Assembly (NCBI RefSeq): GCF_902652985.1
Contig: NC_047015.1
Coordinates: forward strand, 12,214,001-12,278,000
Direction: 5' to 3'
Length of the DNA stretch: 64,000 nt
Source of the DNA: Pecten maximus
Lineage: Eukaryota
The translations under genes and the position numbers were made by a program. Each line of letters begins with the position of its first letter. Position 1 is the first letter of the stretch. Shown piece after piece: positions 36,469 through 63,160 of this stretch. The notes under the pieces were generated by a model. It was not told the DNA's origin and ran no database searches. It saw only the letters and a program-made list of their open reading frames with translations.

Positions 36469-36597
36469 TGTAGCGGGACTGGACTGGGTCGATCATCGGT
36501 GACCAGGTAGCTCAATTGGTAGAGCATCCTGCTAGTGTTCAGAGGTTCCGGGTTAGAACCCCGGTCTGGCCGCTACATTTTCTCCTCTCCTGTTACA
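36469..36597 (+). mobile_element. 129-bp solo-LTR-like element containing a tRNA-Thr(AGT)-like cloverleaf (36501-36572)
   Basis: Ends are TGTAGCGGGA...TCCTGTTACA (8/10 inverted match, TG...CA). Flanks are CAGTG/CTGTG (4/5 TSD). A box TAGCTCAATTGG; T-arm CCGGG-TTAGAAC-CCCGG. Confidence 0.65.
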
Positions 36598-58400: not shown

Positions 58401-61400
58401 CCGTTCAGAAATGAAGTTTCAAGAGTGCTGACAAAGATTTTCTATAAATAGTAACGGTGACCTTGACCTTGGCACCCTGAAACACGAACTCGTTCGAGGT
58501 ATTCCCATGCTGGACCCATATATGAAGTTTGGTCAGAATCCGTTCAAAAATGAAGTCGCAAGAGCGCTGACAAAAAGTAAACATACGTACTTACGTACCT
58601 ATGTACGTACTTACGTACGAACGGAACGCTATATCCCCTCCCTGACTTTCGTCCCGAGGGGATAATAAGTCCTAAGCATGAGGAGGACAAAAATCTATTT
58701 ACATTTACCAGTAATAATTGCATGAAGTATCAGGGCAATTGGATCATTAATGAAGTCTGCAGTAAGGGGACAAAAAGGGGAAATAGCTATAGTTCCACGG
58801 AATTGGGCAGGCTCACATTTTCTGTAAATCTTATTGTACTGTATACATGAAAACAAATGTATATTACTAAGTAAAACTTTGTTAATAGAGGATAAAAATA
58901 AAAGTGATTAGGGGATTCACCAAAAAATTTATGTATCTGTCAAGATTTTCATGAGATATGTGCACCAGTTTTTTCAAAAATTTAGTTAAGTGCAGTCTTT
59001 GATCTTTAACTTTGAGTGAGGACCATCAAAATCTAATTTGGATTAGAATTTCATGCTGTGATGTTATGATGTGGATATGAACTATATATGTCCAGGAGAT
59101 CAAGAGCTATAATGTACTTTCAGAGACAAGCTTTTTATTTGAAAAGTGGTTAAGTGTGACCTTTAACCTTATAACTTGGATGATATAATCTGGTGTAGAA
59201 CCTGATAGTATGATGCTATGGTGTGAATATGAACTAAATATTTCCAGTGGTTTATGAGATATGATGTAGACAAAATTATCATGGATGGGCGTACATATGC
59301 ACATGCAGACCCAAAATGTGATTACTACACCCCTTGCTAAAGTGAGGGGTATGATGAACAATAAATGTTTTGATTGGCCTGCAGGAGGGAAATTTTCAAA
59401 TGTTGACAGACAGTTAGGGTCTCTCAGGCAGTAGCCACAGTCTGTCAGTGGGAGTGGGAGGAATGTTGATAGCTATGTCTGTATTCTTACCACAGTCTGT
59501 CAGTGGGAGGGGGAGGAATGTTGATAGCTATGTCAGTATTCTTACCACAGTCTGTCAGTGGGAGGGGGAGGAATGTTGATAGCTATGTCAGTATTCTTAC
59601 CACAGTCTGTCAGTGAGAAGGGAGGAATGTTGATAGCTATGTCAGTATTCTTACCACAGTTTGTCAGTGGGAGGGGGAGGAATGTTGATAGCTATGTCAG
59701 TATTCTTACCACAGTCTGTCAGTGGGAGGGGGAGGAATGTTGATAGCTATGTCTGTATTCTTACCACAGTCTGTCAGTGGGAGGGGGAGGAATGTTGATA
59801 GCTATGTCAGTATTCTTACCACAGTTTGTCAGTGGGAGGGGGAGGAATGTTGATAGCTATGTCAGTATTCTTACCACAGTCTGTCAGTGGGAGGGGGAGG
59901 AATGTTGATAGCTATGTCAGTATTCTTACTACAGTCTGTCAGTGGGAGGGGGAGGAATGGTGATAGCTATGTCAGTATTCTTACTACAGTCTGTCAGTGG
60001 GAGGGGGAGGAATGGTGATAGCTATGTCAGTATTCTTACCACAGTCTGTCAGTGGGTGGGGGGATGTTGATAGCCATGGCAGTCTTACTTACCACAGTCG
60101 GTCAGTGGGAGGGGGAGGGATGTTGATAGCCATGGTCCCAGACAGTATTCGAACTTCAACCGTCAGTTCTATAGGTGTGTTGGAAACTTCTTCCATCTTC
60201 TTCTTGATATACTTGATCTCTGTAGCACTTTGGAAATATTTGGACTGTGTGATCTTGCCTAGATATCCCATGATCTTTTTGCTGGCTCTACCACCTCGTG
60301 CACTACCGACAAAATAAAAGCTATTAACATCATCACTGGTATATTTTGAGTATATGTAGTAACATTCTATTGAATAAGGAAGGTAGAGCCAACGTCAGTT
60401 CAGGTGGGTGGGTCCTTCAGCGGGGTGCTTCACTTGAACTTGGATACACAAGGTATGCAGGGCGATTAACAGAGTATATAAATATAAAGAGGGGGGAGGT
60501 TAACCGCAACAAGGACAAGTGTCACCAGGTAAGTGGGTTACTTATAATTTATTTGTCGACTAGTTTCGCCTCTATATGCGAGGCTTCATCAGGACCTTCA
60601 ACATTCTATTGAGTGACATAGAAATAATACTTAAAACAATTAATATACTGTTTCCATATATATATATACATGTAAAAACAGTTATATTACTGCAGTATAT
60701 TTAGTATAATTGTACATCAATTTGGTGAAATGTATACAGACAGGAACAAACCATCTAACAAACATTAATTCCCTAAAAAACCTATTTTAACATGAATAAA
60801 TAATTCTATTTGACAGTACTATTTATAGACATACCCATCTTCTGCACTTGGTGAGGAAGCATCTTCTTCCTCATCACTTGAAGATTCAGCACTGTCTTCC
60901 TCGTCTTCATCTGTTATTGCTGATCTGAAAATGAACATAAAAAAGTTCTGCAGATTCCTAAGCTTCATTTCTTCACATGTTCACAAAATATCTTGCATTT
61001 AACTAGGTCTATGTCCAAAATACATTCAAGCACTAGCTATGCTGCATAAGAAGTTAGTTATGCACACACCATGCTTCGATTGACATTTAAACTTTGGTCA
61101 CCAAAAATTGATCACAATAATAATAAGCGTTGTTGCACTCAGTGCAGCAGGTGCTTAAAAAGGGTTTATCTTAAATTGAAAACATAAATGATAATCTTTT
61201 GCATGCACAGGTAGAATAAGTTATAAAGGTACAATAAGTGTGCCTACCTTCTGGCTGACTCTGTCTCTTGTTTGTCAATTGGTGTCTTCTTCAGCCTCAT
61301 AAGGTTCACTTTGGTCTCTATTGTCATTTGAAAGCCACCTTCATAGTTGACATCTATATCTACCCAGAATCCTTGCTCATCAAAGTAGGGTCGTGCTCCA

Positions 61401-63160
61401 CGACGCAAATTTGGCACCTCATTTCCCAGGTCGATATTTGTAATCTTTAGCTCCTCTATGAAATATGGAATCTGAAATAAGCATGGGAAAACTGTGAAAA
61501 TGTGGAACGATTATAGAGATTTGTTCAGAAATAATAATTCTTATGAATCAAATGCAGAAGAGTACAATTCTACATGCGGATGTCTGAAGATGAACAGACC
61601 TCTGACCATATATAGAATTTACCTACTTTAAACTGGTCTATGATATTCTAAGACTTACCAATGGCCAATGGTCTTTCAGTACAATCACTAGTTCTCAAAA
61701 TTTGCCTAAATATGACATTTTACCCCAAATAACGCTCTTTCTGAGAAGTGAGAAAAAATACATCTGATTTGTTATAGAATTCATTCCAATTCGGCAATAA
61801 ACTATATTATAAATCAATTGGAGAGACAATAAAGATTTCATATCTAAAAATCTAAGGTTAATATTCATGTAATACTACAATGCAATAGTATAATTTTTGA
61901 GAAACTGATCTTAAAAAGTCCAGATTCCCAGCATACATAACTTCCCAATAATAGAACCATAAATTCTGGATGTTATTATGTTAATGAAGAGTGTATTGAG
62001 GCTTTCCACTGTGTGAACTGACCAAGTTTGGTTATAGTTGAAATGATACCTTTGAGCAACAGATTTAAATACAAAAACTGCAGAGTGAAATGTTTATAAC
62101 GGCCCTTTCAGCATTGGCATCATCACTGGATAGGTAAAATCATAGACTTAAACTTACCTTGAGACTTTAAAAATTATCTTTTCACGCAGGAAAAATCATA
62201 ATACAGAAATCTCAGTATGTAGGGTTTCTATTTCAAATTATACAAAAATTATACAAAACTCACATGTATTTTACTTAATTTCCTCTGCAGTTTATCCAGG
62301 ACTTTATCAATAAAATACTGCTCATGCAGGAAGTCCCAAAATATTCTATTGATGAGTGCATTTAGCCAGAGTATGTTGAAATCACAATCAATGGGGCTAA
62401 CATATTCTGGAGTCCCTCGCTTCACATGAGTTGGGGTTGACTGGGAGTCTTTCACCTCCTTAGGCATAACCCTGCCCATGAAGCGTATAAAGTCTTCTAA
62501 GCTAGATTTACTAGACACAGGGATATCATCTGTTTCCTTAGTTGGGGAGGATGACCCTGACGACGTTGAATCAGTTGATTCCTGCCTTTTGTTCTGTTGT
62601 ACACCTTCTGTGCTGTTGTTCCTGCTATGGCGCTGGGATTGGGATGATGACTTTTTAATGCACTTGCGTATGAGACCAAGATGGCTTGGGAGGGGCTTAG
62701 CTGCTGCAGCTGCAGTAAAACGTTTGTACCAGTCTTCCTTCTCCCTACAAGTCCTCGCAAACAGGAACAGGATTCCATTCCCACAGGTTTGCTCTGTTAC
62801 AATTTCAAATCCTAGCTCAGAGTCTGGAGTCTCAGCAAGCTTTTGCTCATTCACCATAGCATGGTGTTTTGGGTCAGTACTTGCTAGGGCTATGCAGATT
62901 GGATATTTTTTGCTCCAAATACGTTTTTTCACCAGTCCTGGTGGCACCAAAAATACCTTGCTGCCCTCTAAGTTGTAATGTCTCTGATGAATGAACTGGG
63001 GTGTCGGAATTGGAGGTTCATCCCACATTGAACGCCTGGCAATGTTTGTTTTTGGCCGCCGCAGACGTAAAACTGAATTTTCTAGATCGACATAGATTGA
63101 ATGAGTTTGGTTGATGTGATACTTTTCTGGGTTGTAGCTTGGAATTTCATTCATCCATCC
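49439..63160 (-). CDS. TEX2: Testis-expressed protein 2 (PH + SMP domain ER contact-site lipid transfer protein), 3' part only (545 aa); 5' exons lie beyond the window
   Basis: Exons 63160-62264, 61471-61248, 60924-60835, 60302-60093, 57754-57634, 49534-49439 (TAG), phases consistent. Motifs: GWMNEI..YNPEKYH..THSIYV.LE..LRL; LVPPGLVKKRIWSKKYPICI; LFARTCREKEDWY; WLNALINRIFWDFL; QRKLSKIHIPYFIEEL; MTIETKVNLMRL; DEEDSAESSSDEE; EEVSNTPIELTVEV..LSGTMAINIPPPPTDRLWYGFRGNP; FVYPNLDD. Confidence 0.96.
50225..51696 (+). mobile_element. Two abutting HINE-like elements (50225-50621 and 50622-51696)
   Basis: The first resembles the 1478 family and ends CAGGTGATCTAAAA. The second starts at once with AACAAGAGGCCCATAGGGC and has four core repeats of about 160 bp. 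Confidence 0.7.
51697..53780 (+). mobile_element. Complete HINE/pearl-like element, same family as 43064-44210, with an expanded core array
   Basis: Terminal boxes are nearly identical to 43064. The 326-bp periodicity appears as repeated pseudo-ORFs at 52623, 52949 and 53275. Confidence 0.85.
54374..56046 (+). mobile_element. Complete HINE/pearl-like element with about nine 155-bp core repeats
   Basis: 5' hairpin AAGAGATCCC-AGA-GGGATCTT, a homogeneous array, (GGAC)n microsatellite at about 55936-55985, and a 3' hairpin AGCCCACCATC-TGA-TGATGGTGGGCT. Confidence 0.85.
57909..58666 (+). mobile_element. HINE-like element with about four core repeats of about 135 bp
   Basis: AAACAAGG start, TGACCTTGACCTT core repeats, (TACG) microsatellite, and a 3' hairpin TATCCCCTC...GAGGGGATA. 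Confidence 0.8.
59436..60092. repeat. 55-bp minisatellite (12 copies) derived from a TEX2 exon/donor junction
   Basis: The minus-strand unit ATAGCTATCAACATTCCTCCCCCTCCCACTGACAGACTGTG-GTAAGAATACTGAC copies the last ~41 nt of the exon (AINIPPPPTDRLW) plus a donor site. Confidence 0.95.
60374..60599 (-). mobile_element. 226-bp hammerhead-containing retro-insertion (retrozyme or Penelope pLTR-like)
   Basis: Flanked by a perfect 13-bp direct repeat AACATTCTATTGA (60361-60373 and 60600-60612). It is more GC-rich than the host intron and contains the hammerhead. Confidence 0.7.
60555..60595 (-). ncRNA. Minimal type I hammerhead ribozyme (intact core) in a TEX2 intron, sense strand
   Basis: The minus strand reads GUC-CUGAUGA-A-GCCUC-gcauaua-GAGGC-GAAA-CUAG-UC^GAC. 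Both catalytic boxes are complete, stem II is 5 bp, stem III is the palindrome ACUAGU, the cleavage triplet is GUC, and stem I is GUC/GAC. Confidence 0.8.

What the first reader, a model, noticed from the sequence alone, without database searches (positions are those of the whole stretch)
60361..60612. Intact hammerhead ribozyme inside a young, TSD-flanked 226-bp insertion on the sense strand of a TEX2 intron
Seen: the minus strand at 60595-60555 is a complete minimal type I hammerhead (CUGAUGA, stem II GCCUC/GAGGC, GAAA, palindromic ACUAGU stem III, GUC cleavage predicted between 60558 and 60557). The insertion has a perfect 13-bp TSD and no ORF. Known: minimal hammerheads with a palindromic stem III are typical of Penelope-like elements and of small non-coding metazoan retrozymes, and they generally fold as dimers. 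Inference: this is a monomer of a non-autonomous ribozyme retroelement that is co-transcribed with TEX2. It may be tolerated because a lone monomer cleaves poorly, but it could be cut in trans by family RNAs.
Basis: partly seen in the sequence, partly recalled or inferred. Interest (0 to 1): 0.8.

Follow-up and report, generated by a model that had tools for sequence, protein, structure and literature searches.

The report
Penelope-like element stub carrying a hammerhead
A 226-base end-piece of a Penelope-like jumping gene, carrying that family's usual small hammerhead ribozyme motif, recently landed in a short intron of a TEX2-type gene and is spliced out; this is an ordinary kind of insertion, not a new ribozyme element.

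Summary
Window 60374-60599 is an insertion flanked by a perfect 13-bp duplication. It is 100% identical to another copy in the genome. On the minus strand it carries a hammerhead core (CUGAUGA, helix II GCCUC/GAGGC, GAAA, palindromic ACUAGU, GUC). RNA contigs show that it lies, in sense, inside a 532-nt spliced intron.

- There is a bulged A between the core and helix II. This is a known hallmark of hammerheads in Penelope-like elements (PLEs).
- Helix I has only 3 bp here, against 7 possible bp in longer copies.
- The unit is the 3' end of a PLE family that encodes reverse transcriptase and a GIY-YIG endonuclease. That 3' end is the last ~118 nt of the pseudo-LTR plus a ~105-nt "tail".

The family shows the standard PLE signatures: 5' truncation, head-to-head double insertions with the tail on one arm only, two alternative 3' ends, and 9-15-bp duplications. 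I found no tandem arrays and no evidence of circles, so it is not a retrozyme in the strict sense. Rfam models do not detect it.

The verdict is a new member of a known kind, of low-to-moderate interest. Two side observations deserve follow-up. Copy 5' ends pile up at the hammerhead's 5' edge. Three insertions elsewhere start exactly at a hammerhead cleavage site.

The parts
60361..60373 (.). Target-site duplication, left copy (AACATTCTATTGA)
   Evidence: The last base could also belong to the element, so the duplication is 12-13 bp.
60600..60612 (.). Target-site duplication, right copy
60374..60599 (-). Inserted unit (q1-226): a 5'-short copy of the 3' end of a Penelope-like element
   Evidence: At least 48 matches in the genome, several 99-100% identical. 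It is contiguous with the RT/GIY-YIG body in L031, L032, L033 and L040.
60596..60599 (-). Four letters, GAAG (q1-4), that are not in body-linked copies, which read ATTT here. AG, AAG or GAAG recurs at this junction in six independent copies.
   Evidence: Origin unexplained.
60555..60595 (-). Minimal type I hammerhead motif. Helix I is GUC/GAC (60595-60593 with 60557-60555). The core CUGAUGA is at 60592-60586 and the bulged A at 60585. Helix II with its loop is at 60584-60568 and GAAA at 60567-60564. The palindromic ACUAGU spans 60564-60559, with C17 at 60558. The predicted cut is 60558|60557.
   Evidence: The features match the published PLE min-hammerhead description (PMC4209133).
60478..60595 (-). 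End of the pseudo-LTR (q5-122). Many copies end at q115-123, which is the 'short' 3' end.
   Evidence: It is homologous to L065 reverse-complement 660-769, 75% identity.
60374..60477 (-). 'Tail' extension (q123-226). It is homologous to the first ~105 nt that follow the 5' pseudo-LTR in a full-length relative. Its end is the 'long' 3' end, the likely internal start site of reverse transcription.
   Evidence: 71% identity to L065 reverse-complement 770-885; score 81 against 44 +/- 5 for shuffles. It is present on only one arm of head-to-head insertions. The mechanism is taken from PMC11167929.
60303..60834 (-). Host intron, 532 nt with GT..AG on the minus strand. It would be 293 nt without the insert and one duplication copy. 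The insert ends 71 nt upstream of the 3' splice site.
   Evidence: Spliced joint 60302/60835 in contigs of two RNA-type runs.
60835..60924 (-). Host exon upstream of the intron
   Evidence: Joints 60302/60835 and 60924/61248.

Best explanation
The insert is a dead-on-arrival retro-copy of the 3' end of a Penelope-like element (PLE).

Shown. [quoted passage not shown] The hammerhead is the family's own pseudo-LTR ribozyme motif. The last ~105 nt are the PLE 'tail'.

Inferred, from published in-vitro work on a lizard PLE. The element's RT/endonuclease cut an AT-rich site in the intron and started reverse transcription internally on the element RNA, at the tail site (q226). It then copied back only as far as q5, producing 222 templated bases plus four extra letters and a 12-13-bp duplication.

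Inferred, less certain. The stop at q5 is not random truncation. It reflects a real 5' end of the template RNA at the 5' edge of the hammerhead. That end may be a transcription start inside the pseudo-LTR, as is known for Penelope, with an extra G from the cap. On this reading the unit is a run-off copy of the first ~220 nt of a transcript.

Role in the host. In the host pre-mRNA the motif is a passenger. It is a single copy with a 3-bp helix I and a 2-bp helix III that needs a partner molecule, so little or no self-cleavage is expected. The intron is removed normally.
For: Family and parent element:
- There are at least 48 genomic matches, and several are identical.
- Body-linked copies carry a GIY-YIG ORF and an RT ORF with the YIDD motif.
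- The full-length relative L065 reads pseudo-LTR(hammerhead)-head-RT/GIY-YIG-C2H2 ORF-pseudo-LTR(hammerhead).
- q123-226 is homologous to the segment just after that relative's 5' pseudo-LTR.

PLE insertion signatures:
- The family has two 3' end classes, at q115-123 and at q226.
- Head-to-head insertions always have one arm of each class inside a single 9-15-bp duplication.
- This matches the PLE 'tail at one end only' rule and the finding that both strands are cut and extended (PMC8557442; PMC11167929).

Hammerhead:
- In 37 variants from this genome, 24 have the bulge, 25 have a palindromic centre, and 24 different helix II sequences occur.

5' ends:
- 11 of about 19 short copies begin at q2-8.
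- Seven begin with an extra G before G5, including a 72%-identical old relative.

Host: the intron is spliced in RNA contigs.
Against: - No full-length copy of this exact family is in the assembly. The longest copy has 1.8 kb plus a partial RT. The source element and its 5' pseudo-LTR are therefore inferred from a relative with 59% protein identity.
- The transcription-start idea is untested. Contigs cannot show RNA ends, and the recurrent A before the GG is not explained by cap copying.
- AG-type copies occur with both alleles of the one shared SNP, whereas body-linked copies show only one allele. This would also fit an independent short lineage.
- Whether the motif cleaves at all in vivo in this copy is unknown.
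Confidence: 0.8

Rival explanations
1. The unit belongs to a self-propagating, non-autonomous short lineage. This would be a monomeric, retrozyme-like or SINE-like derivative of the PLE pseudo-LTR, whose master copies start with AGGTCC and borrow the PLE enzyme in trans.
For: - Six independent copies share the non-parental AG before G5.
- The T allele at q194 is found only in short copies.
- An RNA-run contig from a diverged subfamily also shows ...AGGTCCTG after an inverted arm (loose end at 60597).
- An old 72% relative starts GGTTCTGATGA.
- Animal retrozymes are reported to be pseudo-LTR derivatives with variable monomer fractions (bioRxiv 10.64898/2026.07.22.740005).
Against: - Apart from the two to four junction letters there is no diagnostic difference from body-linked copies.
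- No internal promoter is evident, and there is no tRNA, 5S or 7SL head.
- There are no tandem arrays.
- Only five exact AGG-type copies exist in 918 Mb.
- Short copies starting at GTCC, TCC or CTGATGA without AG also exist.
Confidence: 0.15
2. It is a solo pseudo-LTR left by recombination between the two terminal repeats (pseudo-LTR plus head/tail) of a once full-length insertion.
For: In a full-length copy the 5' pseudo-LTR+head and the 3' pseudo-LTR+tail would be identical direct repeats, as in L065. Recombination between them would keep the duplication.
Against: - At least seven such units exist against no full-length copy of a family whose copies are 99-100% identical. That leaves too little time for repeated recombination.
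- The units carry the extra AG letters and are often fused to short inverted arms within one duplication, which recombination does not produce.
Confidence: 0.03
3. The hammerhead has been co-opted to regulate the host gene, for example by intron cleavage or control of transcript level.
For: It is in sense orientation in an intron. Conserved intronic hammerheads are known in amniotes (from memory).
Against: - The insertion is as young as its identical siblings.
- It has a crippled helix I and lies in an intron that is spliced normally.
- It has no conservation history.
- Monomers of this motif class are inactive in vitro (PMC4209133).
Confidence: 0.02

Closest known systems
Minimal hammerheads of Penelope-like elements (Cervera & de la Pena 2014, PMC4209133)
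   Same: [quoted passage not shown]
   Different: Nothing essential. It is a family not described by name, in a different host. Parent copies could form a helix I of up to 7 bp, longer than the 2-5 bp quoted.
Canonical endonuclease-positive Penelope-like elements (Penelope/Poseidon, Neptune, Nematis; PMC8557442) and the in-vitro mechanism of the Anolis element PAc (PMC11167929)
   Same: RT plus C-terminal GIY-YIG, pseudo-LTRs with a hammerhead, heavy 5' truncation, adjacent inverted copies, a tail on one side only, two alternative start sites of reverse transcription, and AT-rich targets.
   Different: The tail is about 105 nt rather than 30-40 bp. A second ORF with two C2H2 zinc fingers follows the RT/endonuclease ORF. 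The clade was not determined.
Animal non-LTR retrozymes (Cervera & de la Pena 2020, PMC7229834; Li et al. 2026 preprint)
   Same: Small, non-coding, carrying a type I hammerhead, and related to PLE pseudo-LTRs.
   Different: Retrozymes are tandem repeats of 150-450 bp expressed as circular RNAs. This unit occurs only as dispersed single copies or head-to-head pairs. Its ends are not at the ribozyme cut site and no circle was seen.

Membership tests
PLE minimal hammerhead (min-HHR) | Conserved core: CUGANGA, GAAA, and U-H at the cleavage site | tested here: met
   CUGAUGA, GAAA, GUC.
PLE minimal hammerhead (min-HHR) | [quoted passage not shown] | tested here: met
   A at q15; G16-C32. 24 of 37 genome variants have such a bulge. 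The feature is as listed in PMC4209133.
PLE minimal hammerhead (min-HHR) | Palindromic 15.2-16.2 / loop 3, giving dimer-type helix III | tested here: met
   ACUAGU. 25 of 37 variants are palindromic: CATG, CCGG or CTAG.
PLE minimal hammerhead (min-HHR) | Located in the terminal repeat of an RT/GIY-YIG element | tested here: met
   L031, L040 and L065.
PLE minimal hammerhead (min-HHR) | Self-cleavage | not testable with these tools
   The only indirect evidence is that three insertions elsewhere begin exactly at the cut site.
Penelope-like element (insertion product) | Continuity with an RT + GIY-YIG ORF in longer copies | tested here: met
Penelope-like element (insertion product) | 5' truncation, adjacent inverted 5'-truncated copy, and a tail at one end only | tested here: met
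   compared with PMC8557442.
Penelope-like element (insertion product) | Partial tandem forming direct pseudo-LTRs | tested here: inconclusive
   Seen in the relative L065 (408-nt repeats). No full-length copy of the window's own family is in the assembly.
Animal non-LTR retrozyme | Head-to-tail tandem repeats of the unit | tested here: not met
   No adjacent direct copies among 48 hits. No unit-end/unit-start junction in the genome.
Animal non-LTR retrozyme | Circular RNA of unit length | tested here: inconclusive
   No back-joint in the two RNA-type runs, but only contigs were available.
Rfam Hammerhead_1 / HH9 / HH10 / type II / type III | Score at or above the gathering threshold | tested here: not met
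   No hit at E<=10 for the window copy or for the full-context parent. Unbulged relatives score 18.6 and 21.6 bits, below threshold.
SINE | Head derived from a Pol III-transcribed RNA (tRNA, 5S or 7SL) | tested here: not met
   No such Rfam match in 60300-60700 at E<=10.

The most novel reading that the evidence does not exclude
The PLE families of this genome may preserve a fossil record of their template RNA ends. One class of short copies ends at the 5' edge of the hammerhead with an extra G, which suggests a capped start inside the pseudo-LTR that leaves the first hammerhead with a crippled helix I. A second class (L110 both arms, L111, L063) begins exactly at the base after the hammerhead cut, with no extra G, which suggests cleaved RNA with a 5'-OH. 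If this is real, it is in-vivo evidence that PLE hammerheads cleave and that both cut and uncut RNAs serve as templates. The in-vitro and RNA-seq work read here did not find such evidence.
Probability: 0.3. Interest if true: 0.55.

Novelty: new member of a known kind. Interest (0 to 1): 0.3.

Why it matters
For the host gene it probably does not matter. The insert is young, lies in an intron and is spliced out. Its ribozyme motif is of a class that is nearly inactive as a monomer.

Its value is as a clean, datable example of PLE insertion mechanics. It has exact boundaries, a tail of about 105 nt, and identical sibling copies. It also led to two patterns that bear on an open question, namely what PLE hammerheads do in vivo: copy 5' ends that pile up at the hammerhead edge, and insertions that start exactly at the cut site.

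Tried and rejected
- Rfam hammerhead models gave no hit for this copy or its parent. This is a limit of the models, because of the bulge and the minimal helix III, and not evidence against the motif.
- Empty-site search. The flanks are unique in the assembly and there is no haplotig without the insert. DNA contigs of other runs bridge the junctions and show no skipping joint, so polymorphism is neither shown nor excluded.
- Tandem or circular forms were not found.
- Full-length source element of the exact family: none in the assembly. L059-L064 are truncated copies, not element heads.
- A spliced-intron explanation for the AG|GTCC junction was rejected, because the parental sequence has no AG at that point.
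- Template switching to q186-193 was rejected because of a central mismatch.
- A snap-back hairpin fits only L009.
- A second ribozyme upstream of q5: none was seen by eye or by Rfam.
- A shared ACATTCTAT in the flank of L064 is a local minisatellite, so the resemblance is chance.
- TEX2 naming. Pfam on single exons gave only a weak PH_SMPa match. The protein atlas was unavailable. The word search returned unnamed homologues with PF23065.
- Folding. The minimum-energy fold of the whole unit pairs q1-6 with q216-221 rather than forming helix I. Helix II forms in every fold. This is not decisive.

Full report
**1. What is in the sequence**

The 13-mer AACATTCTATTGA stands at 60361-60373 and at 60600-60612, around a 226-bp insert. 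I number the insert on the minus strand, q = 60600 - window position.

It reads GAAG (q1-4), GUC (q5-7), CUGAUGA (q8-14), A (q15), GCCUC-GCAUAUA-GAGGC (q16-32), GAAA (q33-36), CUAG (q37-40), UC (q41-42), then GAC....

Two details were not reported. There is an unpaired A between the CUGAUGA box and helix II. Helix I is only GUC/GAC.

Rfam gives no hammerhead hit at the gathering threshold or at E<=10.

**2. It is a repeat, and the repeat is the end of a Penelope-like element**

The unit has at least 48 matches in the 918-Mb genome. One is 100% identical over 224 nt and at least six are 99-99.5% identical.

In many copies the sequence continues upstream of q5 as ...TATAATTT|GTCCTGATGA into a longer body. 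On L031 that body is 1.8 kb. It holds an ORF with a GIY-YIG domain (Pfam PF01541) and a following ORF with two C2H2 zinc fingers. On L040 the body reaches back into a reverse transcriptase with the YIDD motif.

A protein search of the genome finds hundreds of related RT/endonuclease elements. One is a full-length relative with 59% identity, L065. Its layout is: pseudo-LTR with hammerhead, head, an ORF, an RT + GIY-YIG ORF of 748 aa, a C2H2 ORF, and a second pseudo-LTR with hammerhead. The two pseudo-LTRs are 408-nt direct repeats, 99.5% alike.

**3. Anatomy of the 226-nt unit**

Copies end either at q115-123 or at q226, usually followed by TTA.

The stretch q123-226 is 71% identical to the segment that follows the 5' pseudo-LTR of L065. 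The alignment score is 81, against 44 +/- 5 for shuffles. It is therefore the start of the next unit, which is the PLE 'tail' extension.

Head-to-head double insertions are common. Each has one arm with the short end and one arm with the long end, inside a single duplication of 9-15 bp.

These are the published PLE signatures:
- heavy 5' truncation, an adjacent inverted truncated copy, and a tail at one end only (PMC8557442);
- reverse transcription that starts internally at two nearby sites which delimit the tail;
- cutting and extension of both DNA strands;
- AT-rich targets (PMC11167929).

The older relatives of L065 show the same two end classes, about 96 nt apart.

**4. The hammerhead is the family's own, and it is real**

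The loose pattern CTGANGA-N10-24-CGAAAC-NN-GTC occurs 175 times in the genome, against 2 for the reversed control. I read 37 different variants with their flanks. Of these, 24 have an unpaired base after the CUGANGA box. In 25 the central four bases are palindromic (CATG, CCGG or CTAG). 24 different helix II sequences occur, all able to pair.

These are the features that Cervera and de la Pena list for PLE minimal hammerheads, together with a short helix I.

Rfam sees only the unbulged variants, and below threshold: 18.6 bits for Hammerhead_1 and 21.6 bits for HH9. It does not see the parent of the window copy even with its full helix I. The negative Rfam result therefore says nothing against the motif.

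**5. How intact is the window copy?**

The core, helix II and the palindrome are unchanged. This copy is one of 17 in the genome with the exact 38-mer.

The insert's 5' boundary replaces AUUU with GAAG. Helix I therefore falls from 7 possible pairs to 3. Three pairs is also what the L065-type hammerheads have in full context, and 2-5 bp is the published range. The copy is weakened compared with its parents but is not outside the class.

Single motifs of this class showed no detectable cleavage in vitro, and dimers cleaved only weakly. The lizard element's hammerhead needed the element's protein.

**6. Host context**

Contigs of two RNA-type runs join 60302 to 60835 and 60924 to 61248, with CT..AC ends on the + strand. 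The host gene is therefore on the minus strand. The insert lies in sense inside a 532-nt GT..AG intron, 71 nt upstream of the 3' splice site, and the intron is removed.

DNA contigs of another sample bridge both junctions. No empty allele was seen, and the assembly has no second copy of the flanks.

The large exon at 62249-63154 has a weak Pfam match to PH_SMPa, and its homologues carry that domain. This fits a TEX2/Nvj2-type protein, but no source names it.

**7. Is it a retrozyme?**

Animal retrozymes are defined as tandem repeats of 150-450 bp with type I hammerheads, expressed as circular RNAs. A 2026 preprint derives them from PLE pseudo-LTRs and notes monomer derivatives.

This family shows none of that. 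I found no adjacent direct copies and no end-to-start junction in the genome. There was no back-joint in RNA contigs. The unit's ends are not at the cut site.

It is best filed as a PLE terminal fragment. The kinship with retrozymes is real, but membership is not met.

**8. The 5' boundary (unexplained)**

Among copies that do not reach the body, 11 of about 19 begin at q2-8. Six independent copies carry AG, AAG or GAAG before G5 where parents read TT. A 72%-identical old relative begins GGTTCTGATGA.

Random truncation does not explain this. I favour a real RNA 5' end at G5, that is a transcription start in the pseudo-LTR, as is known for Penelope. The extra G would come from the cap; that last point is from memory of LINE-1 work.

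On this view the unit is a run-off copy from the tail start site to the transcript's 5' end. A short self-propagating lineage is the main rival. The T allele at q194 occurs only in short copies. I could not test either idea, because only contigs were served.

**9. A side result**

In the L065 family, 3 of 11 arms begin exactly at the base after the hammerhead's GTC. These are both arms of L110, and L111 (which is ambiguous by 2 nt). None has an extra G.

In an older subfamily of the window's own family, L063 also begins exactly there, after a 4-nt filler and within a 10-13-bp duplication.

That makes three independent events at one particular base. This is unlikely by chance: by my rough estimate about 0.2 such events are expected among about 35 short copies. 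These look like reverse transcripts of cleaved RNA.

**10. Verdict**

The object is an ordinary member of a known kind, with a well-supported mechanism of origin. Two small patterns are worth a proper census.

Noticed in passing
L110 (G000:C14:35806100-35806650) 155-411; L111 (G000:C3:34569800-34570300) 157-332; L063 (G000:C10:3818000-3818900) 375-452: Three independent PLE insertions (four arms) begin exactly at the first base after the GTC of their family's hammerhead, within normal target duplications. They look like reverse transcripts of ribozyme-cleaved RNA. In the L065 family this is 3 of 11 arms.
   Followed up: partly
L001, L002, L004, L007-L010, L012, L018, L025, L027, L034, L062 (5' junctions); window 60593-60599: The 5' ends of short copies pile up at the 5' edge of the hammerhead (q2-8). 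They recurrently carry AG, AAG or GAAG before G5, which the parent copies lack. The cause is unknown: a transcription start with cap copying, a short lineage, or template switching.
   Followed up: partly
window 60526-60534 (+): CAGGTAAGT, a perfect 5' splice-site consensus, lies on the strand antisense to the element. On the element's sense strand it reads ACUUACCUGG, which from memory is like the 5' end of U1 snRNA. It is not conserved in the related family. It could make antisense intronic insertions harmful.
   Followed up: no
L031:3250-3882 (+); L065:3160-3753 (-): Both PLE families carry an ORF of about 200 aa with two C2H2 zinc fingers directly after the RT/GIY-YIG ORF. Canonical PLEs are described as single-ORF elements.
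   Followed up: partly
window 60374-60477; L065 reverse-complement 770-865: The 'tail' extension is about 105 nt in this family and about 96 nt in the relatives. This is three times the 30-40 bp usually quoted for PLEs.
   Followed up: partly
window 36501-36572 (+): Rfam tRNA match, 37.9 bits against a gathering score of 29. It is the subject of another first-stage note.
   Followed up: no
G000:C7:22598596-22598817 (L004): A contig from an RNA-seq run holds this sibling copy with both of its flanks at depth 22.6. The host exons in the window have depth 2-7. Either some copies sit in well-expressed transcripts or the run contains DNA.
   Followed up: no
window 60346-60612 (+): A TTG-started open frame of 88 codons spans the whole insert on the antisense strand. 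It has no ATG and no support, so it is most likely chance.
   Followed up: no
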